Source: Macrostomum lignano (lineage: Eukaryota). From it: a DNA stretch of 64,000 nt. Under the pieces are notes generated by a model. The model had not been told where the DNA came from, did not search any database, and saw only the letters and a list, made by a program, of their open reading frames with translations. The stretch spans positions 124,001-188,000 of the forward strand of contig NIVC01001840.1 in NCBI GenBank assembly GCA_002269645.1. The letters are read 5' to 3'. How positions within the stretch are numbered: the first letter of the stretch is position 1; every line of letters starts with the position of its first letter. Made by a program: the position numbers and the translations under genes. Of this stretch, positions 39,880 through 64,000 are shown one piece after another.

Positions 39880-40605
39880 CTGGACAAGCTAGTTGCTGTT
39901 GCAGCGAGTGTCGGCCTAGTGGTCAACACGCATAAGACCGTCGTGCGCTGCGTGCCGGACGACATCGAGGCTGCGATTTTGTGCGGAGGCGCTGGTGGAC
40001 AGGCGACAGAGCTTCCGCGTTGTCAGCAGTTTGTTTACCTTGGCGGTCTGGTTCCCGGCGTCCGCGAGGATTTGCGGCGTCGCCGCGGGCTTTCCTGGGC
40101 TGCCTTTCGTTCTGTGAGGGCCGTCCTGCAGTCCGAGGCCTTACCCGACCGCCAGAGGGCGGCGTTGTTCCAGGCCGTGATCGAGACCGTCCTGCTGTAC
40201 AACGCCGAGACCTGGACGCTGACGGAGTCACTCGAGAAACAAGTTGACGCGGCGCATGCTGGCCTGCTGGCTCAAGATCGGCTACGAGCGAGTGACCAAA
40301 GCGGCTTTGTATCACCGCGCGCCGGCCTGGTCCGTCCAAGAGACCTGTTGCGCCGTCGTTGACTCCAGCTGGCAGGCCACATCATCTGCGCCGAGTCGTA
40401 CTGCCCACAGCCGGTGCAGGAGGTGCTGCTGCTATCGCTGCAGGCACCCTACCGGTGGGGGCAGACCCGCACTCGGCGTTTCGTCGACTGCCTGCTGGCT
40501 GAAGCCTGGCGCCTTGGATTCGGCCGGCGGCGTGGCGTTCCTTTACAACCTTGCCCTGAGACGCGCCCTGTGACGCTGAACGCGTATTCTGTTGTTGTTG
40601 TTATG
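39880..40605 (+). mobile_element. 5'-truncated RTE-type non-LTR retrotransposon (post-RT region), degenerate
   Basis: GLVVNTHKT, FVYLGG, VLLYNAETWTLT, RR*LQLAGHI; frameshifts and stops; ends in a short (GTT)n tail. Confidence 0.85.
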
Positions 40606-40609
40606 CTTC

Positions 40610-41545
40610 TGGTACTCTTATTATAGAGAAAAAACATAAGCAGCTTTCATTCCATAGCGATGTCTGAACTCCGACACGAGGGCCTTCTTCTTAAGCTCAA
40701 AGACTCGAGTCAGGACGATCCTCTGGACGCTGTCCAGGCGTCAGTTCAGCGGTGATCTCTGGTCACTTCGGGTTGCAAGTCGCCGTCACTAACATATCCG
40801 GCTTGCCGAACTTTTAAACGTACGTCATGGCGTCCTGGAGACGCTCCATCAGATATCGCGGTCCGCGGTATCCTGTTGGTCGGTTCGTATCATGATCTTG
40901 CTGGCGCAATACTTCATGGGAGACAGTTTGCGGCCATTGGTCATGCAAAGCTCGGGATGCCAGCCGCTCTCTCTGTTCGGAAACAGAAACACGGTCGAGT
41001 ACTCCAGCGGATCGTATGTTCTGTGCGTCTCAGAAATGCTTCACCTTCACGCAGTTGGATGACTAAATGTCGCAGCTGTTCGGTGCTAGCTCAGCATCCC
41101 CTGCAACAAGGATTCCCACCTCGTTCGCCGTGGGCAGATTGTACCGCCTGAATGTGAGCAGAAATGGTGTTTAAATTACAAAGTGTAATTTAACGTACTA
41201 AGTGTATTTTAATGTTACAGAAATAATAAATTTTTGAATAATAAGACTATACGAAATTATCTATGCTTGAAGAATGCAGCTTACCGAATGTATTCACCAG
41301 CCGGGCGTCGATCTGGGTGAATCACGATACGAGCATCTCACAGCTGAGGATCTTTGCTGATTCGCTGCGATACAGCCAGCAGACTCCGCCCATACGAATT
41401 GCACTCGTGAAGCAATTCTTGCAGCAACTGCAGAAGCTCAGGCTTCATCTTTTAGCTGAGGCTGAGGCGGCTTTCGAGCTCGCGATCCAAAAAGTACACC
41501 TGCCAGCCCTTAGGAGTACTGGAAGCATTAGCCATGAGCGGCTAG
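40610..41545 (-). mobile_element. Degenerate Helitron RepHel fragment (Rep domain N-terminal part) containing an intron
   Basis: Minus-strand translation across stops and frameshifts: QVYFLD..LLQLLQELLHECNSY; RRYNLPTANEV; YDPLEY; GWHPEL; GPRYLMERLQDAMTYV*KFGKPDMLVTATCNP..PEI..GQRPEDRP..RVF.LK; AYVF..EYQK. Intron 41284-41148 (GTAAG...CAG). Confidence 0.85.
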
Positions 41546-42144: not shown

Positions 42145-42780
42145 TCAGTGCCCCCTCCCTAAAAACACACGGAGAACATGGCCCGCGCCACTGCGTTGGA
42201 GTTGAGTGTTGAGGCTGGGGGAGTGCGCTTTAATGTACAACGCTGCTTCAAGTATCTGCAGTTTGGAGTCAAATGAGCATTGGTCAATGACTTTGAAGCG
42301 CTCTTCGGGTTTGCAGTTGGAGCAACTATTCCACTCTAAGAAATGGTTTTGGATACCCGACGGTTTCAGCCAGTGCTCCCTGATTCTAGTGTGCAGGTGC
42401 CTTTTAGTTTTCCCCACGTATAGGAGACGCTCTGGTCATCAGAGCAGTTGAATTGATAAACGACACCAGCACGAAGAGCTGGTTTAACACGTGACTTCAA
42501 CCAACCGACAAAGTTGCCAACCTTAGCAGAACAAAAGATGACGCGGATGTTGCAACTAAGCGAGTTGCGGAACAATTTGCAGATTTTATTTTTGAAAAGT
42601 TGAGAAGGATAGCCAAAGAGAGGGAGGACAAGAGTTGGTTCGATGAGATCGATGGGATCGGCTTTAGCGCTAGGCTGATTGACAATTTTCTCAGAGACGA
42701 ATTTGTGAATGCGAGTATGGATAAACGCACGAGGATAACCATTTTGCTGAAACATTTCAACAAATATGTACTTAATTATT
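42145..42780 (-). mobile_element. Penelope-like element 3' fragment (RT thumb end plus GIY-YIG endonuclease), frameshifted
   Basis: NGYP; GVVYQFNCS; YVGKTKRHLHTRIREH; ILEA(A)LYIK..PSLNTQ. Confidence 0.9.
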
Positions 42781-43259
42781 GATTAAATTTACACCAAAAA
42801 TTTCGTATTTATTCACTTCCGATCTCTACTAGAAGATGCACACTGTTGTGCGAAACGCGTCGTTTAACTAAATTAATGTTTATTTTCGCTTCTGTATTCA
42901 TCTTACTTTGATAAATTCTAAATCGACGCTTAATGCTTATGGTATACACTACGAGTATATACACAGGTAAAGGTAACAAGCTACACTGTATTAAAGGCAC
43001 GATGTAATTTTTACTGTCGTAAAAATGTCATTGAGACCAATTACTTGTACTTGACTAGCCATTGTAGGCATTTGTAATCTTCACACCAAAAGTAACTATT
43101 CTAAATTTAGCATCAACTTTTGTTATATTTTTTCAACTTTAAATTTTATTCAGAAGTGTCATAAATGTACGATTATTAACTTGAGCTTGTCGCGATTGTG
43201 AATTTGCATTGCTACGTCCTACGTAGAAGTACATGTAAGGATGCATGGAGAACCATTAG

Positions 43260-44066
43260 GGTTGTTAATCTGGGAGAGTTGTCTGGGGGAGTTTAGTTTT
43301 TTAGTCGTGGCTTTTAGCTACATGTAGTCACCGCGTTTTAGGCTCAAAGTTTATTATAGTTTAAAAAAAATGCTGTTTATGTCAGTCCCATTCTACACTA
43401 TTAATCACTAGTTGAGTTCGTGCCAATTTACATGATTAGCCAGTCGGGCGCTGGGCTGTGCGAGCATTTGAACTTGCCACATTCACATCGCTTTTTCTTC
43501 TATTGCTCTCGAGTCTCGGATATCTACCATCCATATAAAAATGATATACAGATCCTTAGCCAGACTTCTGGATAAAATCACAAGTATTCCTCACTGACAA
43601 CGGCCAACAGCAAAGTTTCTAAGCTAAATCACAGCTTAGAAAAGCAGCTAAAACAAGTACAACAAAGCAGCAAAGCAACAAAAAATGATGTAAGTTTTTT
43701 AGCGCCAGGTGCCATTCCAAGCAAAACTGATACCAAAAGCCTGGATCGATCGATCTTAAGCAACAATATCCATGCTATTCACCAAACTTTTAGATAATCG
43801 TGAGGACTTTTTGATAAATCCGACTGGTCGCTCTGGTAAGATGTAAGATGTAATGGCAAGGGCCATCTCCAACCAAGTGCTAGAAACTTTAAAATAACCT
43901 TTTTATGCTTTGTAGACAGATCGAACAACTTTACCTCCAGAACTTTCTGTCCACTGTTTGACATTACCGGAAGAAGCTAAGTTAAAACAGGGCTTGTCCT
44001 AAATCGCCCTGCTTCTTGCAATCGTTGACTGCAATCAACTCTGAGCGGCCAAGAGCTATCAATAGC
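43260..44066 (+). mobile_element. Old, heavily degenerate RT/RNase H LINE 3' portion ending in the (AAC)n tail at 44067
   Basis: Remnant peptides: VFSRG..HV, YVSPILHY (cf. YVRPVLEY), VFLTD, APG, CPLFDI, and terminal IALLLAIVDCNQL* (stop 44042-44044), which matches the terminus of the adjacent intact copy. Confidence 0.6.
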
Positions 44067-44146
<80 letters not shown>

Positions 44147-44147
44147 C
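44067..44147. repeat. (AAC)n, about 27 units
   Basis: Direct inspection; one AAT variant. Confidence 0.98.
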
Positions 44148-44938
44148 TACACCGATGGCTCGGCCATCGGAGGGGTCGAAAACGGCGGAGCCGCTTGGAT
44201 CCTCCTCGACCATGATGGCACTAGCCGTCGCCGCGGGCACGCAGCAGCTGGTCGCTGGTGCAACTCTTACGAAGCCGAATTAATGGCCATCAAGCTCGCC
44301 CTGGAAGACATTATCAGCTCCGAACCGCGCCATGCCGTCATACTGACCGACAGCCAGAGCGCCATCGCCGCCATCAAAGCTGACCGTCCAACCCTCAACC
44401 TGCGGCTTGAGCAAGTTAAAGATCTCCTCGCTAACGCAGCCATGCACACGAAGATCGCCCTGCAATGGGCTCCGGGACATTCGGGAGTGCCCGGTAACGA
44501 ACTGGTCGACGCAGAGGCCAAGTTCGCGGCCACTCTGCCTCAAGACGAGTCCGAAATTTCCCTTGCAGCTGCTAAAGAGCGCATCCGCCATCATCTCAAG
44601 TACCGCCCAACCCTTCAGGGGCACTTAGCCGAGGTCTATGGTAAAAAGATCTCCTTCCATCAGGGACCGCGTCGCCAACAAATCCTCGTGGCGCAGGTCA
44701 GAGCAGGCCACTGCCCTGTCTCCAACTATTACCGCAACCGCACCGACATCACCGAAGGCGGCCCCTGCCGACTTTGCCTGGATGTTCCGGACCAATTCCA
44801 CCTCTGGACCTGCCCCAAGCTCGAAGCTAATCGGCGCAACATCGGCGTCACTAGTCTGAGTGACTTTGCACGTGGTGACTTGGTGGCGCAGCTCCTGGGA
44901 GCCGTCGACTGGCGGCCCCTGTGAGTTGCTCACCGCAG

Positions 44939-45018
<80 letters not shown>
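44148..45018 (+). mobile_element. 5'-truncated LINE (RNase H domain plus Cys/His C-terminus, uninterrupted frame) with (AAC)n tail
   Basis: YTDGS, YEAELMAI, ILTDSQSAI, LQWAPGHSGVPGNELVDAEAK, RAGH, CRLC..HLWTCP; stop at 44924, 16-nt 3' UTR, (AAC)n at 44941-45018. Confidence 0.92.
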
Positions 45019-45019
<1 letters not shown>

Positions 45020-45423: not shown

Positions 45424-46506
45424 CTACAAGTGGGTCACGGCGTCGATAGTTGATATGTACACACTGGAAGATGCTTGCGTCGCTTGGTTCTCCTCAGCAG
45501 CAGTGGAAGCAGCGGCAGTGGCGTCGGCGCTTGGTCGATGGCGACTGGCGATGCCAGCACCAACGCTGGCGCTACGCGAAGCGAGCCCTCGATGGCCGGT
45601 GATACGTCTGAACAGGTGCGTTCCAAAGTAAATAAACGGATTAGCCAGACTATTGGCAGCGGTCAACAGGTACACCAGAATGTTGACTACTTCGCTTTCA
45701 GTGTAGTATTTCTGAATGTTATCGTCCAGTAAGCGCAGTCCACCATCGATGAACCAGAGTACGTTGGGGAAAGCTTGCGTCAGAACGAACACGATGCTAT
45801 TAGCTAGCATGATTTTCGTGAAACTCCTGGCCGCTGCGCTAAATGTTCGACAAGAGGTTCGCTTTCTGCACAGCTCTCTCAGGACCAGGCCGTAGAACAC
45901 TGTCATGGACACTAGCGGCAGAATAAAAGCGGCCAGTATCCAAACGTAGAACTGGATTGTGAAGAACAATCGCCAGTGCACGATAACGTAGTCGCTTTTC
46001 CTAGTTGGGTCGCAGTTTCCGTCAACTAAGACTGGCGGCAGGCACCAGGGAGCCGAAACCAGAGCGCTGGCCAGGACGCACGCGCCAATTCCGAGCAGAA
46101 CGGTTCGCATCTTCAGGAATTTGTAACGCATCGGCTGGCACACGGCCACGTATCTCTCGCAGGCCACCAGGCACAGGTTGAACACGGACCAGAGGAACAG
46201 GCACCAGAACAGCATGCCAGTGTAGGCCACATTGCACAGAAACAGATCCAATGGTAGCCAACCAGACAGAGGTAAATTGTTCCAGTCCTGCAGCTGGTAG
46301 AGCAGAGCGGCCGTGCACACGCTCAGGTCCAACCAGGCCTGCAGTCTGAACAGAGCCAACGGTAACCGGCTGGTGACTCGATTGCACACCAGGTAGACGA
46401 ATAACAGCAGGTTGAGCAGGATGCCCAGCGCGTTCACTGGCACGTAGATTAGGCGAGTGGGCAACGAACTTGTCGAGTTGTCAGTCGTAGAAATTTCTAG
46501 CGACAT
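45424..46506 (-). CDS. Intronless rhodopsin-like (class A) GPCR, 360 aa, paralog 1
   Basis: Seven hydrophobic segments, CERYVAVC (DRY-like), Cys at the top of TM3 and in ECL2, ANPFIY (NPxxY). ATG at 46506; the ORF track starts at an upstream GTG. Confidence 0.92.
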   Translation of the reverse strand: MSLEISTTDNSTSSLPTRLIYVPVNALGILLNLLLFVYLVCNRVTSRLPLALFRLQAWLDLSVCTAALLYQLQDWNNLPLSGWLPLDLFLCNVAYTGMLFWCLFLWSVFNLCLVACERYVAVCQPMRYKFLKMRTVLLGIGACVLASALVSAPWCLPPVLVDGNCDPTRKSDYVIVHWRLFFTIQFYVWILAAFILPLVSMTVFYGLVLRELCRKRTSCRTFSAAARSFTKIMLANSIVFVLTQAFPNVLWFIDGGLRLLDDNIQKYYTESEVVNILVYLLTAANSLANPFIYFGTHLFRRITGHRGLASRSASVGAGIASRHRPSADATAAASTAAEENQATQASSSVYISTIDAVTHL

Positions 46507-54659: not shown

Positions 54660-54970
54660 TGGTTGTTGTTGTCGTTGATGTTGTATGTTGTTGCTGTTGT
54701 TGTTGTTGTTGTTGTTGTTGACTGCGGACCGAGCTCGAAATAACCGGACCAGGTACCAAACCCCTACCGCTGACAGAGCCAGCGACAAAGGCTGAGCACA
54801 GAGGGCCGGACCGAGCCACATCCACCGCCCCTGAGCCAGGAGCGGTGACCGATTCCCGGCGCTCTTCGCCGCCCGAAGAACGGGCGTTGCCTCCCCCCCG
54901 CGACAAAGACGCGGCGCCGGATAGGGCCTGCTGATTACCCAGCAGGCTGGGAGTAAATCCCAGGGGGTGC

Positions 54971-55056
<86 letters not shown>

Positions 55057-55265
55057 TTGTATGCGGTGAGCCTCTCCTAAAGGTGACACCAACCGATGGC
55101 CCCTAGGAGAAGCGCCATTTCGTCGGCGCGAGCGAGTTGACACATTTCGGTAATGCCGTGAGTATGGCGTTGGATGTCCAGGGCCGGGCAGTTGAGAAGG
55201 TGTGTTGTTGTTGTTGTTGTTTGTGGTGGTGTTGTTGGTGTCTTTGTCTTTGTTGTTGTTGTTGT
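54660..55265 (-). mobile_element. Stack of short 3' ends of (AAC)n-tailed LINEs separated by (AAC)n tracts
   Basis: 55054-55200 encodes HLLNCPALDIQRHTHGITEMCQLARADEMALLLGAIGWCHL* and ends GCTCACCGCATAC-(AAC)n, matching the copy at 44148-45018. 54721-54970 ends CCGCAGT-(CAA)n and is more diverged. Confidence 0.75.
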
Positions 55266-56214
55266 TTTATTTTTTCGATACATATATGGGCTCCGATGCT
55301 ACTTTTATCTTGTATGAAATTCTGCTTATTTAACAGAATCAAGCATAGCTCGTAGCGAATCAGAACTAAAATATATATTTTACCTGTGTTGCAGTTTGGA
55401 TGCAAGTCCCTCGGGAAGAAGGAGGATAAAGTATTAATAATTTTTGACATGTCATCAGAGAAGCCACAACAATCAATCAATGCTATCAGACCTATTAGAT
55501 TCTATTAGATAGCTACCGCGAGGCAATTTCTTATGAGGGGAAAATTGTTTTAATAATGATTGCCTATCGAAGCTTTTTCCTTCGAATTCCGGATGAGATC
55601 CCTCAGAGGCCTGCAGACTCCTAAAGCAGATTCAGCAATCGATGTAGCTATCGAGGCTACAGCAGATCAAGGAAGAGAGGCAAATAGATTGAAAAAAACA
55701 GCGTATAGATCGAAGCTCACGGCAGTTTTCAAAGTCTAACAGACCTAAATTTAGTACCCAAAAACGCAGCTTTTTTCGACGTGATTCTCAAAGCGAAGTG
55801 TCCTATCAATACGAAGATAAACAAACTTATTTGATCAATTATACATCCATGGACAACTGCTGTAGAAGGACGCTGCAATCGATGTTTTTGAGAAATGAGG
55901 CGGCTAAGGAACGTATATTTGTCGCAGATGACGAAGAGTGTTGACGTCATCTTGTACTCGTACAGAGCGCCATAAGAACGTTGGAGTCGATTTTATTACG
56001 AGTAATGCCGCAGTCACGTCTTTTTCGTCTATGGCACAAGGTGTGGCTATGTTGTTGCCCTTATGGTATGATGCGAATACTCTGGTCGCATCGCTAAGAA
56101 CGCATTACTCTAAATGGGGTCTCGCCAAAGACACATCTGGTCAAAGGAAATCCTCCCTAGAAACATCTCTCGATTTCTCATGAGCATACCAATATAAGTT
56201 CCTTATTCGCCTTA

Positions 56215-56345
56215 GCGGCAGCTATTGCAAAGGCTGCGTGCGGCTGTTCAGTCCAAGGACTGGGGGGTCGCCACACACACCCCTCAATTACTGTACCCCA
56301 GCTAATGGTGGCGCCCATTTTACAGCTGGGTGGATGCATTGCGCG
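56215..56345 (-). mobile_element. Partial SINE body, homologous to 58695-58810
   Basis: Shared AAGGCTGC..TTCAGTCCAAGG..GGGGGTCG.CACACAC..CCTCAA.TAC..CCCCAGCT...CCCATTTT.CAG. Confidence 0.6.
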
Positions 56346-58893
56346 TGCAGTGAAAACCGGCTTAGGCCGGTTATTAGCTATTCGGAAATTAAAACGAGTT
56401 AACAGTGCGTTTTACTTAGGAGTCAATAAATAGTATCTGTAATAAGCATGCTTAACTACTAAAACATTATCGTCGCTTCATATTTATATTCAGTAGAATA
56501 GATTCAGTAATTTTAAATACGTTTTTTACTCGTATATCTTTCGATTTCAAACTAGCTAAAATGACTACGACGTTAAGACGTGTCGCAGTCAGTCATCATT
56601 AGCTAAATTAGCTAATTAGGGTTGTTGTCATTAGCTAAAACGCGTTGCAAACTAAATGGCTTATTATGAGATTAAATCTGAACACTGCTTAATGAATGGC
56701 TAGCGAAAGTCGAGGGTACACCCTAAGTGAGAGCGCGTGGTGTCTGCTTCCTGTGTGCAAACTTGCCTCCTAAATTTTCGACCTGATTTGCTATGATGAC
56801 CGAAGCCCGGCATACATATGAACACACTAATTTAGTAAAAGCTGATGTCGTGCACCTGTCTAACCATAGGAAACAGTACTCGCAACATTCTGTGCTACTT
56901 AATTCTCCAGTCTCCTGTAAGCGCGCCTCATCCAAACAAAAAGATTGAACTCGGAACATCCTACAAGCTGATGTATCCCAGTTCATAATTAGCATAGTAA
57001 ACCGCAGCAAACAAAAGGGTTAGCATGCATCGATCCCTCATTTCGACAGATTGCTCATTAAGACGCGCACAAAATGCTCATACTACTTGCCCATTTGCAT
57101 CTAGGTCCATTGGCAAAGTCACCATTGAACGATACATGCAGTGTGTGTATCGAGTCGAGCTTTGAGCATCCGCTCTCAATCTGCTCGCTAACTAGCTAGC
57201 TCGTGCACTGCAACTTGAGACAGAAGCGACTCGTATGCGCAGGCGAACTAATCCTCCGAGTCGCCTCAAACATGTCCTACTCGTGCTTATAATTACTTCT
57301 AATCCCTTCTTCTGTATGTCTATACTCGCGGAGTAGCTATGCGTGTACTCAGTTGAGTTTGCGAATTCATCCAAAGCTACCACTGCATGTGGCTGCATGT
57401 GAGCTATACGTACGCTCACGCATGCACACTGGGCACGAGAGGGAGAGGGGGGGGAAACGGCTCAGCATCTGGCTGCCGAGCTTTAAAGCAAGTGCTTCAA
57501 TCCCGTCCTGTGCCCAGCACGCACCATTGAGCTGCCCATGCTTTTTCTTGATTCGCCCATTTCTTCCATCCCAACGGAGCCCCTCCCTTGGCCTGTACCC
57601 TTTTTTGATCTCCGTTTTTGCAGGCTTCCCTCCATCCAACATCCACCGACGGGAATGCCCTACTCTCCTCTCATGCATGCAGGTCTCGAAGCCGCATACA
57701 GTAGCTCTTAATCCCTTGCCCCATGCTAGATCTTTCCTTGTTGGTCCACTTCTTTCTTCGTTAAGTAATACTATGAAAGTGTATATGAACACCTCTTGCA
57801 TACTTCGCTAGATACCAGCTACATAGCATGTATTCATCTTCGATTGTATTCGCATTTTCAGAAGTGCAACAACCCCTCTCCTCGCCAAACCGCCCACAAG
57901 GCCACTGTAGATTGAACCACGAGCCTGTCCTTACACTTGTATTGTGATTGCACCTTACAATCTCATCCAATGGTTGAGTTCCCCAGCGGCTGAGCTTAGC
58001 TAGCTTAGCTACTATAATAAGACTTATTTTACCTGCGTAGGATTGAGGTACGAGCTACCTAGTTACGCCGACGTATTCAGACTCGATAAGGCGCTGTATT
58101 GAACCCTGATTATTCGATCAGTTGTGCCAGCATTCACCGCATGAGTCATCCGCAGCGTCGCTGCAACTCGGCTACCAGCCGTAGCAGCGCTTCCGGCGAC
58201 TCGAACCATGAAGGCGGCGGAAGTGGCACGGTCGCAGGTGGCGCTACCGCAGCTACCGGCGGATGCTTTGAGTCAGTGCACGAACGGGTTGGCAGCTACT
58301 TTAAAGTCAAAGGGATTAGAAGAACGTCTAGGTGAGTGCATGAAGCTTTACTATAGTATTACTGAGCAAGCACGCGAGAGCTTATAAAAGAGTACTTGAT
58401 GCGTCGAGTCCATAATTTCCCTCTTGAGTCAGCTAATGAGTGGGTACATGTAATTCTTGGGTGAGCTTTGAGTTCGAAAAAGTTCATGGCTGAGTTCATC
58501 AGTGTGTTCCCTGCAGTGGCTCCTCTGCTCTCGGCCCTAGCTTTCTCCGACGTGCCCCCGGCATCCCGTTTCGGCCATGCATTGTTGCGCATCAGTGGCA
58601 TGCTGTTCTGACTATATGCACTTTTTAAAATTAAACCTGCTCTAATGGGCAGATGTGCAACCGACAGCGGAGCCGAAGCTATTGCGCGGCGCATCTAAAA
58701 GGCTGCTTACGGCTTTTAATTCAGTCCAAGGGGGGGGGGTCGTCACACACCCTCAAATACCCCCAGCTTATATAATAATGCTGGTACCCATTTTTCAGTT
58801 AACCTGGGTTAACTGAAGGAATGCAGAGTTATAAGTGTCTTGATGACTTCATCAAGGACGCAATTGTTACGAGTGGATCGAGAATCGAACCCC

Positions 58894-61800
58894 CGGGAGA
58901 GCAACAACCTGCGCCTCCCCGAGGTGCCCTCTGGAGGACCGAAAGGTTCACGAAATGCAGGTCAGCAACGGGCCCTTCTCGAGGCCCAACACCGCGACGC
59001 AGTCTCTTCGCCGCCCAATTGGAATCTGGCGGCCACCTGCCGATTAAATGACTAGCCGACGCCTGAACCAGCCCGCCGAGCCTCAACGGCGGGCCCCCGG
59101 CGGCGCGAGGCGCCCCCCGACCCAGCGGCCCGTGCGCGCGCGGCCCCCCAGTAGCCTACACCTCCTGCAACTCAACGCAGAGGGCGTCGCCTCCAAGATG
59201 TCCGAATTGTGCAAGCTGCTGCTGGATCTGCGCATCGACGTGGCGTGCCTGCAAGAGACCCACACCACCGAGGGTCGGGATCCGCGCCTGCCAGGGTTCA
59301 ACGCGATCTGGCGCCACCGACAGAGCGGCCGGCGCTCCGGCGGCCCCACGCGCGGAGGAGGCGCTGCAATCCTCATCCGCGAGAGGCTGCGCTTCGAGGT
59401 GCTGCAGGAGCGCCCCTGCGCCCCCGATGACGTCACCACGGAGTGGGCCGGCGTCCGGGTTTTCCCCTCTGAAAAGAGCGTCGAGAGCCTGGACATCCAC
59501 TGCCTCTACATCCCGCCGATCAGAACGGCTGAAGGCGACGACCGCGTGCAGCGCTTCAGCCCCCAGCACCTCCCGTCCGGCGTCAACACGGTGATCCTGG
59601 GCGACCTGAACGCGCACCATCCGGCCTGGGACCCCGAATCGGAAGAGTCGGACCTGGGCACGGTGGTCTTCGAGTGGTCCGTGGTGTCCGGCATGCGCGT
59701 CCTGAACGACAACAGCGCCACCCACATGCCGCGCCGCGCCAACACCCGGCAGACGGCGCCTGACGTCAGCCTGTCCCACAAGTCGCTCGCCAACCGGGCC
59801 GAGTGGCAGGTCCGGGGAGACGTCGGCTCGGACCACCTGCCGATCTGCATCACCATCCACAGCCGAGGCGCGGCCAAGCGCGGGGGCGCCGCCCGGCGGT
59901 CCTGGGCGAAGGCGGACTGGGCCCGGACCGAGGAAGCCCTGGCTGGCTGGGAGGCCTGCCCGCCCGAGTCGGTCAGCGAGGCCAACCAGCAGCTGACCAC
60001 GGCCATCCAGGCGGCCGACAAGGCGTCTGTCCCTCGCGGGGCGCGGCCCTCCGCGAAGGCCTGGTGGACGCCAGAGGTCGACGACGCCGTGAAGGCTCGC
60101 CGCGCCGCGTGGGCCGCCGCCGCCGCCGACCCGAGCGTGCGGCCTGCCTGGAATCGAGCCTGTGCCGACGCCAAGAAGACGATCGCCGACGCCAAATGCG
60201 AGAGCTGGAGGACCTTTGCCGGCGAGGTGGCAGCTGACAGCGACCACTCCAAGATCTGGAGAGTTGTTCGCTCCCTCGACGGCAGAAATAGCAACCTGCA
60301 GCGGGACGCAGCGCTCTGGGTGGGCCAAAAGACGCTCGTCCAGTCGAAGGACATCGCCGAGGCCTACGCCCGTGAGTATGCCGCCGTCAGCCGCCTCCCT
60401 GACGATCTGCACTGAACATCTGCAGCACCTCGGTGCCGCTGGCCGCCGGGCGGTCCTGCAGCTGATCAACGCGTCCTGGACCCAGGGGGAGGTCCCCGCG
60501 GCGTGGCGCCGTGCCCACATCGTGCCGATCCTCAAGAAGGGCAAGCCGGCCGACGAGATCGGCTTATACCGGCAGATTGCCCTCACCTCCACTCTGGCCA
60601 AGCTGGCCGAGCGTCTGGTTCAAGCGCGGCTCTACTGGTGGGCCGAGTCCCGGCACTTGCTGCACCCCGCCCAAGCCGGCTTCCGCAAGCGGCGCAGCAC
60701 CGAGGACCAGATTGCCCGCCTCACCCAGCTCATCAGCGACGGCCACCAGGCGGCCCCCGCTAGGCGGACGGTCGTCGTCCTGTTCGACTTCCGGTGGGCG
60801 TACGACAAAGTCTGGAAGCAGGGCCTGCTGCACAAGCTGCACAACGCCGGCATCCCAGCGGCCGGGGTCCGCTGGCTCAGCAGCTTCCTGGCCGATCGCC
60901 GCGCTGCCGTCAGGGCGGCTCTTCCGAGAGGGCCTGCCACAGGGGAGTGTCCTTGCCCCTCTGCTCTTTGCGCTGTACATCAACGACCTGCCTGACCACC
61001 TGCCGTCCGACTGCACGCCGTTCCTCTTCGCCGACGACCTGGCCATCGCAGTGCAAGGCCTGACCGTGGAAGAGGCCGAGACGAAGGCGCAGGCTGCGAT
61101 CGACGCGGTCTCCGACTGGGCGACCGAGTGGCGGATGGAGCTGGCGCCGAACAAGTGCGCCGCTTCCCTGTTCACCACCACCGCTGGAGAGGCCAGCCGC
61201 GAGCTGCGTCTGCGGCTGAACGACGCCCCGCTCTCGACGGACCGCCAGCCGCGCTTCCTCGGCGTCATCCTGGACCGGCTGCTCAGCTTCACGGCGCACG
61301 CCGCCAACGTCGCCGGCCGCGCCCGCGCCCGCTGCGGCGTTCTGGCGGCGCTGTCTGGCAGCAACTGGGGCGCCAAGCAGAGCGACGTGCGCCAGCTCCA
61401 CACGGCCTACGTGCGGCCGGTGCTGGAGTACGCTGCCGGCGCCTGGATGCCGACGGCCTGCAGGACAGCTATCGACCACCTGGACCGGGCCCAGCGCCTG
61501 GGCGCGCGCATCATCACCGGGTGTCTACGGAACACCAGGTCGGAGGTGCTGGAGCGCGAGGCCGAGTTGCCGCCGATGGCAGTCCGCGCGGAGATGCACG
61601 CTGGCCTCCTCCACGAGCGCGCCCTCAGGCTGCCGCATGACAACCCGCTGCGCGCCTGCGCGGCCAGCGTCGGCCCGCGTCGCCGCCTCCAAAGCGCCCG
61701 CGGCTGGCGCGAGACGGCGGCCAGTGTATGCAGCGCTGCGGGCCTGGGCGGCTTCCCGCGAGAGCCTGTCCACGCTGTCCCGACGACACTTCCCTGGGCT

Positions 61801-62780
61801 GTTCTGGACTCCGTCACCCTCGGGCTGCAGCTGGCCTCCCCGACCTCGCGGGGGGACCTGCCGGAGGCCCGGAGAGCCGCGGCGGAGCAGACGCTTGCTG
61901 TCCTGCCGCCCGCCAGCACCGTGGTCTGGACCGACAGAGCGGCGAAGGACGGCATCCTGGACGGCGGCAGCGGCGTCCTGGTCGAGTCCAACACGACGCT
62001 GTGCGTCGCTGCTGGCCATGTGACGTCCAGCTTCCACGCCGAGTTAGTGGCCATCGCTGAGGCCCTTCGGTGGGTGCTCGCGGCCCCGGACCCGGCAGAG
62101 CTGTCGCCGGTCCGCATCTGCTCCGACTCCCTGAGCGCGCTTAGCGCGCTCGCGTCCGGCCCCGGGTCGACGGGCGCCACCATGATCGACGCCGTCTGGG
62201 CCAGCCTCGCCGACCTCGCGGCCCGGGGAACCTCGGTCCACCTGCAGTGGGTGCCTGGCCACGCGGGAATCCCCGGCAACGAGGCCGTGGACGAGATCGC
62301 CAAGCGAGGCTCCACGCTGGCGCAAGGCACCGCGCCAGTCCCGCTAGCTTCCGCGCAGGCTGCCGTCCGCCGCCACTGCCTCACCCGCTGGCACCAGATC
62401 TACAACGCGGCGGCCACCGAGGCGGCGAGCACGAGCTCGCTTGCCTGGCACCTTGCCTGCACGGCGGGCCGCCTGCCGCCTCAGCCGACGAGCGACCGCT
62501 GCCTGGCCCTGCGGGGCTTCCAGGCCGCCATCGGCGTTGACGTGGCCCCCACCTGCCGCTTCTGTGGCGATGGAGAGGAGACGGCGGCCCATCTGCTGAT
62601 CTCCTGCCCCGCCCTGACATCACACCGCTGCCTCCTCTGGGGGCCAAGCCCGGAGCGCGCGGCAGTTTTCGAGAACTGCGTCGCGGTGTTGAACTTCCTC
62701 GGGAAGGCGGGCGCCATCTGACGCCCGGTGCCATGGGCCCTGGCCCGAGCACGCCCGAAGAAGAAGAAGAAGAAGAAGAA
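58894..62780 (+). mobile_element. Near full-length single-ORF LINE (APE-RT-RNase H-CCHC), Ingi/I-group-like, inactivated by two internal lesions
   Basis: APE (LQLNAEG, CLQET, GDLNAH, GSDHLPI) from ATG 59048; RT (PILKKGK, QAGFR, LPQGSVLAPLLF, FADD, RFLGVILD); RNase H (WTD, HAELVAI, SDSLSAL, WVPGHAGIPGNEAVD); CRFC..H..C; stop at 62721; (AAG)7 tail; 13-bp TSD AGAATCGAACCCC at 58881-58893 and 62777-62789. Frameshifts with apparent deletions near 60400 and 60915. Confidence 0.95.
58896..58962 (+). ncRNA. HDV-like self-cleaving ribozyme (predicted) at the LINE 5' end
   Basis: P1 58896-58902/58926-58932 (G.U at the cleavage site, one A-C mismatch); P2 58907-58912/58957-58962 (6 bp perfect); P3 58913-58915/58923-58925; L3 UCCCCGA; P1.1 C58917-C58918/G58933-G58934; P4 58936-58949 with GAAA loop; J4/2 A-C58951-GAAAU. 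Confidence 0.85.
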
Positions 62781-64000
62781 TCGAACCCCGACCTTTCAGT
62801 CGTGAATCCGACGCTCTAACCACTATATCGGTGCTTGAACTCAATGCGGGATCTAGGCAAGCGGAGTTCAAGGGGATCGCGAAGAAAATCCTTGGATCCG
62901 CCACTGGCTACAGCTAGCTAGTACGTTCAGAGGGCGCAGCCAGGAATTTTGGAGAGATGGGGTTTGTATATCAAAGCTAGGGGTCAAGAGGGTTGACGAC
63001 TTTTGACTACCATCCTGTACAGAATTTATTACTCTACAAGAGAGGGGTCCCGTACAGAAAAGCTCATTACTCCTCTCAAAATGAAGATTGACAAAAATCG
63101 AGTTGTGCATCTTTGTAGAGAGATAAATTTTGTACAGCAGGATGGCGAAGAATAACCATGCAGCTTTCTAGGTTCAAAAATAAATCCAGGGAGCATTAGA
63201 AAAAACCAGCCTCCAACAATTTTCTGCAAGATTTGGCCAGTTTTTCCTCCCTAGTTAAGTACTCCCTGGTGTAGTGTAGAGATTGGCCTTTCATGGCGTT
63301 ATACTTGAGCATGTATTGATCGGTGGGTTCGTAGCTGACGGGTGGTGGGGCGGGGGGTCGGAGACAGTGTGATTTTCATAGGTTGTACCCATATCCGCAG
63401 CAGGTCTCCAAAGGAAAGCAGAATTTATTGATAATTGATTACTGACAATTAAAACGGGTAGGGAATCCCACTTTTTAGCAATCTGAAACCGCAGCAAAAC
63501 AACGACTATTTAGACGTTAATTATGGAACTGGCGGTAACAAAAAGCAAAAGAATCAAATAAAAACGTTTTTAATTGTTTTCTACCGCATATTCGTGATTT
63601 TTTGTTTTAACGCGACTTTCCATGAAATAATTCTATAAGCGTCGGCTCCTTAGCGCTTGAGCTGTATAGTGGCATAGTGGCATAGCTAGGCTAGGCCTAC
63701 TTCATTGTGTTACTATTGCAATTTGCAAGTCTGTGTGATCTAATCTGATAGTCGCGAACTTCATTTGTTAGACAGCGACTGTTAAGTTTATTGTCAAAAT
63801 TCGCACTGCGAATTGATTTTGCTATCTATTTTTTTATTGTAGTATGGCAGAGAGACTCATTTCTTCTACTGGCTACGTACCTGAAGACGGAATGACTGGC
63901 GCTCAGCTTTTCGAGAAAGGAGCTGGTATGACATACAAGTAAGCAACAATAAACAACTTTTATGTCATTCATTTGGTTTGTTAACAATAAAACTTTGAGT

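What the first reader, a model, noticed from the sequence alone, without database searches (positions are those of the whole stretch)
43260..45018. RNase H LINEs stacked head-to-tail in their own (AAC)n tails (locus 1)
An intact-frame, 5'-truncated copy (44148-44940) begins directly after (AAC)~27 and ends in (AAC)~26. The sequence upstream of the first tract is the decayed 3' end of a related LINE: its last codons read IALLLAIVDCNQL* versus VAQLLGAVDWRPL* in the young copy, with RT-thumb and RNase H remnants further up. The first tract therefore looks like the old element's tail, used as the landing site for the young one. This suggests a self-propagating system in which each insertion creates the target for the next. 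Microsatellite-specific non-LTR elements are established (Waldo and Mino in AC repeats; Kibi and Koshi in TC/TTC repeats). An (AAC)n-specific RNase H-bearing family is not one I recognise.
Basis: partly seen in the sequence, partly recalled or inferred. Interest (0 to 1): 0.8.

Follow-up and report, generated by a model that had tools for sequence, protein, structure and literature searches.

The report
AAC-tailed LINE fragments stacked in AAC tracts

Summary
The core observation is real. The stretch 44148-44940 is an intact 258-codon RNase H plus Cys/His C-terminus of a LINE. It is cut off exactly at the RNase H start and lies between (AAC)~28 and (AAC)~27.

A second stack on the minus strand (54662-55266) repeats the pattern with two more fragments. 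All three readable 5' junctions lie in AAC tracts, which make up only 0.59% of the window.

The claimed old LINE upstream shrinks to a ~65-nt stub. Its last 13 codons plus stop rank first of about 6,400 stop-adjacent sites. A profile HMM, an anchored frameshift-tolerant alignment and tblastn with seven relatives find no RT or RNase H remnant further up. Its tract is 99% pure, so "old and decayed" is not shown.

Relatives from five other assemblies end in (AAC)4-7 at ordinary sites: 0 of 11 measured 5' junctions lie in AAC, and none are stacked. Sister families end in (GAA)n. The AAC repeat is therefore the element's own tail, as (TAA)n is for the I factor.

Best reading: priming inside the tail makes long AAC tails preferred landing pads. 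Not excluded: true endonuclease specificity for (AAC)n, or single-event template-jump concatemers. This is a new member of known kinds, of moderate interest.

The parts
43640..43684 (+). Possible decayed older (AAC)n-like stretch upstream of the stub (weak evidence)
   Evidence: It is the best AAC-like stretch in the window outside the five clear tracts, at 26.8 bits against 22.6 for the next best. blastn to a pure tract gives E=0.043. The ungapped scan does not flag it.
44003..44066 (+). Stub: the last 13 codons (IALLLAIVDCNQL), stop at 44042-44044 and a 22-nt 3'UTR of a divergent related LINE; nothing recognisable further upstream
   Evidence: Peptide ranks 1 of 6419 and 1 of 6381 against the young copy. 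DNA-level alignment anchored at the tail gives p~0.01 over 64 nt. There is no extension of homology.
44066..44151 (+). (AAC)~28 tract 1: tail of the stub and landing site / 5' flank of the young copy
   Evidence: TRF gives 28.7 copies. Purity is 99%.
44148..44940 (+). Young 5'-truncated LINE copy: RNase H plus Cys/His C-terminus ORF (44148-44924 including stop) and 16-nt 3'UTR GTTGCTCACCGCAGAC
   Evidence: Translation. Pfam RNase_H 7e-14. 40% identity to P0001 and 36% to LINE3. All relatives align from 44148.
44939..45019 (+). (AAC)~27 tract 2: tail of the young copy, possibly plus the remainder of the split tract
   Evidence: TRF gives 27 copies. Purity is 99%.
55203..55266 (-). Locus 2: imperfect (AAC)~21 tract at the 5' side of fragment b
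   Evidence: TRF gives 77% matches. 9 of 64 positions do not match; Fisher p=0.002 against the inner tract.
55059..55202 (-). Fragment b: the last 41 codons (…EMALLLGAIGWCHL*) plus 3'UTR GAGAGGCTCACCGCATAC of a family related to the young copy
   Evidence: tblastn 45% identity, E=2e-6. Translation.
54971..55058 (-). Locus 2: pure (AAC)~30 tract between fragments b and c
   Evidence: TRF gives 30 copies at 97%. Purity is 99%.
54720..54970 (-). Fragment c: 250-nt GC-rich non-coding, strongly folding sequence ending GCTCGGTCCGCAGTC(AAC)n; possibly a non-autonomous partner or a long 3'UTR that shares only the terminal box
   Evidence: Sequence and three-frame translations. No HMM hit. RNA fold z=-3.8. 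No other copy in the window.
54662..54719 (-). Locus 2: imperfect (AAC)~19 tract at the 3' side of fragment c
   Evidence: TRF gives 85% matches. Purity is 93%.
58884..62780 (+). LINE3: near-full-length sister-family LINE (APE, RT, RNase H, zf-RVT) with frameshifts, an (GAA)8 tail at 62757-62780 and a 12-bp target-site duplication GAATCGAACCCC (58872-58883 and 62778-62789). It serves as a comparator that shows the lineage's architecture and a tail unit at the start of the duplication
   Evidence: Sequence. ORFs. Pfam Exo_endo_phos, RVT_1, RNase_H, zf-RVT. Its closest relatives end in (AAG)5.

Best explanation
WHAT IT IS
The finding consists of 5'-truncated 3' ends of an I-factor-like LINE lineage (APE endonuclease, RT, RNase H, C-terminal Cys/His motif). 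Its transcripts end in a short box, GCTC..CCGCA(G/T)NC, followed by an element-borne (AAC)n tail.

SHOWN
- The tail belongs to the element, not to the target. Relatives in five other assemblies carry (AAC)4-7 at unrelated, non-AAC sites.
- Sister families carry (GAA)n instead.
- In this genome the tracts are 19-30 units long.
- Copies have their 5' junction inside an existing (AAC)n tract three times in 64 kb, producing two head-to-tail stacks.

INFERRED MECHANISM
- Target-primed reverse transcription starts inside the terminal repeat, as with the UAA repeats of the I factor.
- A nicked (GTT)n bottom strand pairs perfectly with the (AAC)n end of the RNA.
- Long AAC tracts, which in this window are all LINE tails, are therefore preferred landing sites.
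- Each insertion splits the tract and adds a fresh tail, so stacks grow by successive hits.
- On this reading the preference follows from tail-to-target complementarity plus unusually long tails in a genome prone to microsatellite expansion. It does not need an AAC-specific endonuclease.
For: - Anatomy of both stacks.
- RNase H and Cys/His identity.
- The architecture of the lineage is seen in LINE3 and in the full-length relative L048, which has a separate upstream ORF, an APE ORF and an RT-RNase H ORF.
- The AAC tail is clade-wide and sits at ordinary sites:
  - L001;
  - 11 independent truncated copies with tails of 4-7 units, different flanks and 0 of 11 5' junctions in AAC;
  - L048, L054 and L055.
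- Sister families end in (GAA)n or (AAG)n.
- LINE3's target-site duplication begins with GAA, one unit of its own tail. The L039 duplication begins ACA. Both fit priming by tail-to-target pairing.
- All AAC tracts in the window abut LINE fragments and cover 0.59% of it, yet 3 of 3 5' junctions lie in them.
- Locus 2 tract purities of 86%, 99% and 93% (p=0.002 for outer against inner) fit successive events.
- The window is extremely rich in long microsatellites.
- Literature: I-factor TAA/UAA repeats are needed for precise RT initiation, and UnaL2 repeats are linked to slippage (PMC3747384). The I-factor ORF2 architecture is given in PMC2881922.
Against: - There are only two loci and three or four elements, all in one 64-kb window.
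- The host genome could not be searched, so the fraction of family members outside AAC tracts is unknown.
- No empty (pre-insertion) allele is available.
- No endonuclease domain of the AAC family is present in the window, so its specificity is untested.
- At locus 1 both tracts are 99% pure, so the order of events cannot be read. A single event is equally possible there.
- No seed element is recognisable upstream of the 5'-most tract of locus 2.
- The stub rests on 13 codons plus a weak DNA signal (p~0.01).
- No target-site duplications flank either stack.
Confidence: 0.5

Rival explanations
1. True microsatellite specificity. In this host the family has evolved an endonuclease that cleaves (AAC)n/(GTT)n, as proposed for Waldo, Mino, Kibi, Koshi and Dong. 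On this reading essentially all copies sit in AAC arrays, and part of each flanking tract is target rather than tail.
For: - 3 of 3 readable 5' junctions are in AAC tracts.
- No family copy in the window lies outside a tract.
- No seed element is visible upstream of locus 2's first tract.
- The 3' junction is always C|AAC.
- Microsatellite-specific APE-type LINEs are established (PMC3812793).
Against: - Related AAC-tailed families in other hosts insert at ordinary sites: 0 of 11 5' junctions in AAC, plus L001, L048, L054 and L055.
- The sister family LINE3 has an ordinary target-site duplication.
- The 5' junction phase within the repeat unit varies among the three copies.
- The endonuclease of this family has not been seen.
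Confidence: 0.2
2. Single-event concatemers. During one target-primed reverse transcription the RT reaches the 5' end of a broken template and jumps to the (AAC)n 3' end of another LINE RNA. It thus copies several short 3' fragments, each with its tail, before the cDNA is joined to the chromosome. On this reading the internal tracts are tails that were never genomic targets.
For: - All four elements are severely truncated (about 65, 793, 144 and 250 nt).
- The locus 1 tracts are equally pure at 99%.
- End-to-end template jumping is documented for the R2 RT (Bibillo and Eickbush 2004, cited in PMC2881922).
- Each stack mixes different subfamilies, and fragment c is non-coding.
Against: - Locus 2 tracts differ in purity (86% against 99%, p=0.002), which suggests different ages.
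- No single target-site duplication bounds either stack.
- Both stacks begin with an AAC tract or a stub rather than unique DNA joined to an element body.
- No stacks are seen among the AAC-tailed relatives elsewhere in about 300 kb of related loci.
Confidence: 0.2
3. No insertion preference. Independent AAC microsatellites and LINE fragments were brought together by unequal exchange, duplication or passive accumulation in a repeat-rich, low-recombination region.
For: - The window is very repeat-dense.
- Passive accumulation near CA repeats was proposed for Drosophila Waldo-A/B (PMC3812793).
Against: - The junctions are exact, with the element abutting the tract on both sides in every case.
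- Every tract follows a LINE 3' box in the C|AAC register.
- There are no AAC tracts elsewhere in the window except a chance (GTT)4 beside a Helitron fragment.
- The fragments in a stack are different sequences, not duplicates.
Confidence: 0.05

Closest known systems
I factor of Drosophila melanogaster (I clade LINE) and I-like RNase H-bearing LINEs
   Same: - ORF2 has the same order: APE, RT, RNase H and a C-terminal Cys/His motif (PMC2881922; here).
- The tail is a short trinucleotide repeat rather than poly(A). In the I factor this is (TAA)n, and it is needed for precise initiation of reverse transcription (PMC3747384 citing Chambeyron 2002).
   Different: - The tail unit is AAC (GAA in sister families).
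- Tracts here are 19-30 units, against 4-7 in relatives.
- Stacking in own tails is not, to my knowledge, a described feature of the I factor.
- Placement in the I clade proper, as opposed to Nimb, Ingi, Tad1, LOA or R1, was not tested.
Microsatellite-targeting LINEs: Waldo (ACAY)n, Mino (AC)n, Kibi (TC)n, Koshi (TTC)n, Dong (TAA)n
   Same: Copies are flanked on both sides by the same microsatellite. The list is in PMC3812793 and holds no AAC-specific family.
   Different: - Those families belong, from my own knowledge, to the R1, Tx1 and R4 clades, and their specificity is a property of the family.
- Here the repeat is demonstrably the element's own tail.
- Related families are not AAC-specific.
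- Specificity in this host is untested beyond three junctions.
Zepp LINEs of Chlorella/Coccomyxa, and telomeric HeT-A/TART arrays
   Same: - They form clusters of nested or head-to-tail truncated LINE copies (PMC3446292; PMC13534243 abstract).
- From my own knowledge (Higashiyama 1997, not readable here), Zepp copies insert into the poly(A) tail of earlier copies.
   Different: - Those tails are poly(A), and the clusters are telomeric or centromeric, with one per chromosome.
- Here the tail is (AAC)n and the stacks are small and lie among genes: a 7TM receptor ORF lies 400 bp from locus 1.
L1/Alu insertion into A-rich tails, and microsatellite birth from LINE/SINE tails
   Same: - The primer end of the nicked target pairs with the RNA tail, so earlier tails attract new insertions.
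- Tails seed microsatellites (PMC3812793).
   Different: Here the tail is a trinucleotide repeat in a lineage that recognises a specific 3' end, rather than poly(A) with relaxed recognition.

Membership tests
I-like RNase H-bearing APE-type LINEs | RNase H domain with catalytic D-E-D-D downstream of the RT | tested here: met
   Pfam RNase_H 7e-14. D3, E44, D68 and D121 are invariant in the alignment.
I-like RNase H-bearing APE-type LINEs | C-terminal Cys/His (CCHC-type) motif after RNase H | tested here: met
   C207, C210, H218 and C222 are conserved with P0001. zf-RVT is hit weakly in LINE3.
I-like RNase H-bearing APE-type LINEs | N-terminal APE endonuclease and RT in the same element | tested here: inconclusive
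   This is met in the sister element LINE3 and in the relatives L048 and L054. The AAC-family copies in the window are truncated before these domains.
I-like RNase H-bearing APE-type LINEs | Placement of the RT within the I clade (against Nimb, Ingi, Tad1, LOA, R1) by phylogeny | not tested
   No reference set of clade representatives was available. The PDB search was uninformative.
I-like RNase H-bearing APE-type LINEs | Simple-repeat (non-poly(A)) 3' tail carried by the element | tested here: met
   (AAC)n follows the 3'UTR in copies from six sources at unrelated sites.
Microsatellite-specific LINEs (Waldo/Mino/Kibi/Koshi/Dong type) | Most or all copies have both junctions inside the same microsatellite | tested here: inconclusive
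   3 of 3 readable 5' junctions in the window are in AAC. That is only two loci, and the host genome is not searchable.
Microsatellite-specific LINEs (Waldo/Mino/Kibi/Koshi/Dong type) | Specificity shared by related family members | tested here: not met
   0 of 11 5' junctions are in AAC in a related AAC-tailed family. L001, L048, L054 and L055 are also at non-AAC sites.
Microsatellite-specific LINEs (Waldo/Mino/Kibi/Koshi/Dong type) | Endonuclease that cleaves the repeat specifically | not testable with these tools
   This needs a biochemical assay, and no APE domain of this family is in the window.
Own-tail nesting LINE clusters (Zepp-like) | Head-to-tail truncated copies, each abutting the tail of the previous one | tested here: met
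   Locus 1 reads stub, tract, young copy, tract. Locus 2 reads tract, b, tract, c, tract.
Own-tail nesting LINE clusters (Zepp-like) | Large clusters at telomeres or centromeres | not testable with these tools
   The chromosomal position of the window is unknown. The stacks hold only two elements each.

The most novel reading that the evidence does not exclude
In this host, an I-like RNase H-bearing LINE family has become truly (AAC)n-specific and seeds its own targets: its long AAC tail creates the very target its endonuclease and RT require. AAC microsatellites in this genome would then be largely LINE-made and would grow as nested stacks. This would be the first microsatellite-specific lineage outside the R1, Tx1 and R4 groups, and a case where target specificity evolved from tail identity.
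Probability: 0.2. Interest if true: 0.55.

Novelty: new member of a known kind. Interest (0 to 1): 0.35.

Why it matters
If the preference holds genome-wide, it shows in a simple system how a LINE's tail sequence can steer where the next copy lands, and how a microsatellite class can be created and then repeatedly interrupted by one element family. It would also explain clusters of AAC tracts and mis-assembly-prone stacks in this repeat-rich genome.

The (AAC)n tail on RNase H-bearing LINEs from six sources, with (GAA)n in sister families, is a useful annotation marker. I did not find it described in the literature I could search.

It does not open a new class of mechanism. Simple-repeat tails, microsatellite targeting and own-tail nesting are each already known.

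Tried and rejected
1. Extended homology of 43260-44045 to LINE proteins was rejected. The tests were tblastn, a frameshift-tolerant local alignment against shuffles, a family HMM on three frames against 138 host segments, a stop-anchored alignment and seven full-length relatives. My own by-eye matches (LVALVR, CPLFD) did not survive these tests.
2. Reaching the host genome failed.
   - An exact-protein look-up found nothing.
   - The closest protein is only 40% identical.
   - The 7TM receptor gave no homolog.
   - A viral contigs pattern scan was empty.
   - Three genome-contig hits (two Poribacteria MAG contigs and one Akkermansia MAG contig) are chance matches inside bacterial coding sequence, with only three AAC units and no LINE. 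The sponge-host idea they suggested was dropped.
3. No target-site duplications flank either stack.
4. The (GTT)4 at 40591-40602 was tested as a possible seed copy at a non-AAC site. It lies beside a Helitron_like_N fragment, not a LINE.
5. A decayed older tract at 43640-43684 is the best residual AAC-like stretch, but only marginally. It is kept as weak.
6. A conserved 3' hairpin in the AAC families was not significant. One appears only in the (GAA)n subgroup.
7. Clade placement through solved structures was uninformative. Rfam and tRNA scans of the window were empty.
8. Literature searches for an AAC- or CAA-tailed or AAC-targeting LINE found none. Repbase could not be consulted.
Full report
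THE SEQUENCE

The window is eukaryotic and AT-rich (45.7% GC overall). It is dense in long micro- and minisatellites (68 TRF rows).

At locus 1, an (AAC)n tract of 28.7 copies (44066-44151) is followed at once by a GC-rich (60%) open frame of 258 codons (44148-44921). Then come a TGA stop, the 16-nt 3'UTR GTTGCTCACCGCAGAC and a second (AAC)n tract of 27 copies (44939-45019).

The frame is an RNase H domain (Pfam 7e-14, covering profile positions 7-140 of 141). Its D-E-D-D residues are intact, and a C-x2-C-x7-H-x3-C motif follows. Alignments of seven relatives all begin exactly at 44148. This is therefore a LINE copy truncated at the start of RNase H and joined directly to the tract.

A SECOND STACK

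On the minus strand, 54662-55266 reads in element orientation as follows:
- an imperfect (AAC)~21 tract;
- fragment b (144 nt): the last 41 codons, ending EMALLLGAIGWCHL*, plus the 3'UTR GAGAGGCTCACCGCATAC. It is 45% identical to the young copy (E=2e-6);
- a pure (AAC)~30 tract;
- fragment c (250 nt): GC-rich and non-coding, with a strongly folding RNA (z=-3.8), ending GCTCGGTCCGCAGTC;
- an imperfect (AAC)~19 tract.

The box GCTC..CCGCA(G/T)NC immediately before C|AAC is shared by the young copy, b and c.

Every (AAC)>=5 tract in the window abuts one of these fragments. The tracts occupy 380 bp, or 0.59% of the window. Three of three readable 5' junctions fall in them, which chance does not explain (about 2e-7 under random placement).

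THE CLAIMED OLD LINE UPSTREAM

The peptide IALLLAIVDCNQL* is there (44003-44044), 22 nt before tract 1.
- Among all 6,419 stop-adjacent 13-mers in host DNA on both strands, it is the single best match to the C-terminus of the young copy. Ungapped, it is also the best match to fragment b.
- In a stop-anchored, frameshift-tolerant alignment it ranks 1 of 6,381 against the young copy and 8 of 6,381 against fragment b.
- At the DNA level, anchored at the tail, support is modest (p~0.01 over 64 nt) and fades with length.

Nothing further upstream is LINE-like.
- A local frameshift-tolerant alignment scores 29 against a shuffle mean of 29.7.
- A 21-member family HMM scores -2.7 bits, inside the range of 138 host control segments. 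The young copy scores 287 bits.
- The anchored alignment gains nothing beyond codon 13.
- tblastn with full-length relatives is silent over 42800-44147.

What exists, then, is a stub of about 65 nt from a divergent relative. There is no decayed body with RT-thumb and RNase H remnants. The stub's tract is 99% pure, the same as the young copy's, so the stub need not be old. A very short 5'-truncated copy explains it as well.

A faint AAC-like stretch at 43640-43684 is the best residual AAC match in the window, at 26.8 against 22.6 bits. It may be an older tract, but this is weak.

WHOSE REPEAT IS (AAC)n?

Relatives answer this.
- The closest protein, P0001 (40% identity), lies on a contig that ends stop, 23-nt UTR, (AAC)5.
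- A metagenome scan returned 46 loci. Many are from one sample series and belong to one family with the 3' end ...GATCGAGCGCCAGAAGAA(AAC)4-7.
- Each of these loci with a tract has a single tract, always just downstream of the ORF, and the downstream flanks all differ.
- Eleven independent copies are 5'-truncated at different points (561-1823 bp). None has AAC at its 5' junction.
- A full-length relative on a 2-Mb contig (L048: a separate upstream ORF, an APE ORF and an RT-RNase H ORF) ends TAA(CAA)6. So does a second copy in that assembly (L054).
- A copy among arthropod cuticle-protein genes (L055) ends in (AAC)5. All three are at ordinary sites.

The window also holds a sister element, LINE3 (58884-62780), with APE, RT, RNase H and zf-RVT.
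- It is 36% identical to the young copy in RNase H.
- It has an (GAA)8 tail and a 12-bp target-site duplication GAATCGAACCCC that begins with one tail unit.
- Its nearest relatives end in (AAG)5.

The lineage therefore carries family-specific trinucleotide tails. (AAC)n is a tail, not an ancestral target.

MECHANISM

The architecture and the simple-repeat tail match the I factor. Its TAA/UAA repeats are required for precise initiation of reverse transcription (PMC3747384 and PMC2881922).

If priming occurs inside the repeat, a nicked (GTT)n strand is an ideal primer for an RNA that ends in (AAC)n. This window's genome makes very long repeats, and its AAC tracts are 19-30 units against 4-7 in other hosts. 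Such tails become landing pads, and each hit splits the tract and adds a new tail.

Two observations fit pairing at the priming step. LINE3's duplication starts with GAA, and the L039 duplication starts with ACA.

At locus 2 the tract purities are 86%, 99% and 93% (p=0.002 for outer against inner). This fits the following order: an old tract, then c, then b bringing a fresh tail.

I rate this tail-homing reading at 0.5.

RIVALS

- True endonuclease specificity for (AAC)n in this host's family (0.2). It is consistent with 3 of 3 junctions and the missing seed at locus 2. It is not supported by the relatives.
- Single-event concatemers made by RT template jumping onto other RNAs' AAC ends (0.2). 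It is attractive for locus 1, where both tracts are equally pure and the elements are very short. It is disfavoured at locus 2 by the unequal purities, and generally by the absence of a bounding duplication.
- Passive co-location (0.05). It is contradicted by the exact junctions.

COMPARISON WITH KNOWN SYSTEMS

- Microsatellite-specific LINEs are known for ACAY, AC, TC, TTC and TAA repeats. None is listed for AAC (PMC3812793). I found no paper on AAC-tailed or AAC-targeting LINEs, but Repbase could not be checked.
- Own-tail nesting is known for Zepp (PMC3446292; the poly(A)-tail detail is from my own knowledge).
- Head-to-tail arrays are known for the Drosophila telomeric elements.
- L1/Alu tails attract insertions and give birth to microsatellites.

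The present case combines these known features with a new repeat unit. I file it as a new member of known kinds, with interest 0.35.

LIMITS

- The host could not be identified.
- The decisive genome-wide census of 5' junctions, the search for empty-site alleles and the endonuclease assays remain to be done.

Noticed in passing
window 58872-58883 and 62778-62789, with flanks 58715-58883 and 62781-62860: LINE3 is inserted, with a 12-bp duplication, into a repeat whose minus strand has a tRNA-like T-arm box (GGTTCGATTC) and D-loop-like TAGTGGTTAGAGC, possibly a tRNA-derived SINE. ARAGORN and Rfam find nothing. A similar 'cagtccaagg...ggggtcgccacacac' segment recurs near 56240-56330 and 58722-58790.
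   Followed up: partly
window 62733-62752; L049 2239-2255; L050 2354-2369: The (GAA)n-tailed subgroup has a G/C-rich hairpin roughly 5-16 nt before the tail, with a different sequence in each member (GGGCC..GGCCC, GGGCCCC..GGGGCCC, GGACCU..GGGUCC). It may be a 3' recognition stem-loop. The z-scores are -1.1, -3.4 and -1.9.
   Followed up: partly
window 54720-54970 (-): Fragment c is non-coding but folds far better than shuffles (-133.6 kcal/mol, z=-3.8). It shares only the terminal CCGCAG.C box with the LINE copies, so it may be a non-autonomous element mobilised by this LINE.
   Followed up: partly
window 44016-44924 (+): The upstream (AAC)n tract is in frame with the RNase H ORF. This gives a 302-aa ORF with a poly-Asn run of about 28 residues in front of RNase H. 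It is probably accidental.
   Followed up: no
window 45427-46506 (-): An intronless 360-aa rhodopsin-family 7TM receptor ORF (Pfam 7tm_1, 5.8e-17) lies about 400 bp downstream of locus 1. The word-indexed protein search found no homolog.
   Followed up: partly
window ~40710-40850 (-): A Helitron_like_N fragment with internal stops (Pfam 1.1e-11) lies next to a chance (GTT)4 tract.
   Followed up: yes
window 42145-42755 (-): Two overlapping ORFs (90 and 129 aa) look by eye like the GIY-YIG endonuclease end of a Penelope-like element. They have no Pfam hit at E<=1, so this is unverified.
   Followed up: partly
window 1-37241, e.g. 25063-26178, 7782-8941, 21443-22554: There is an extraordinary density of long tandem repeats: (AGAT)279, (AGGAG)~227, an 80-bp satellite in 14 copies at 99% identity, and a 42-bp satellite recurring at 694-1861, 11358-12676 and (inverted) 29785-30059. 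This indicates a genome prone to repeat expansion, which may explain the unusually long AAC tails.
   Followed up: no
window 63846-63941 (+): The last ~100 nt of the window read [32 protein letters not shown]. By eye this resembles the N-terminus of IMP dehydrogenase, probably a first exon. It was not tested.
   Followed up: no
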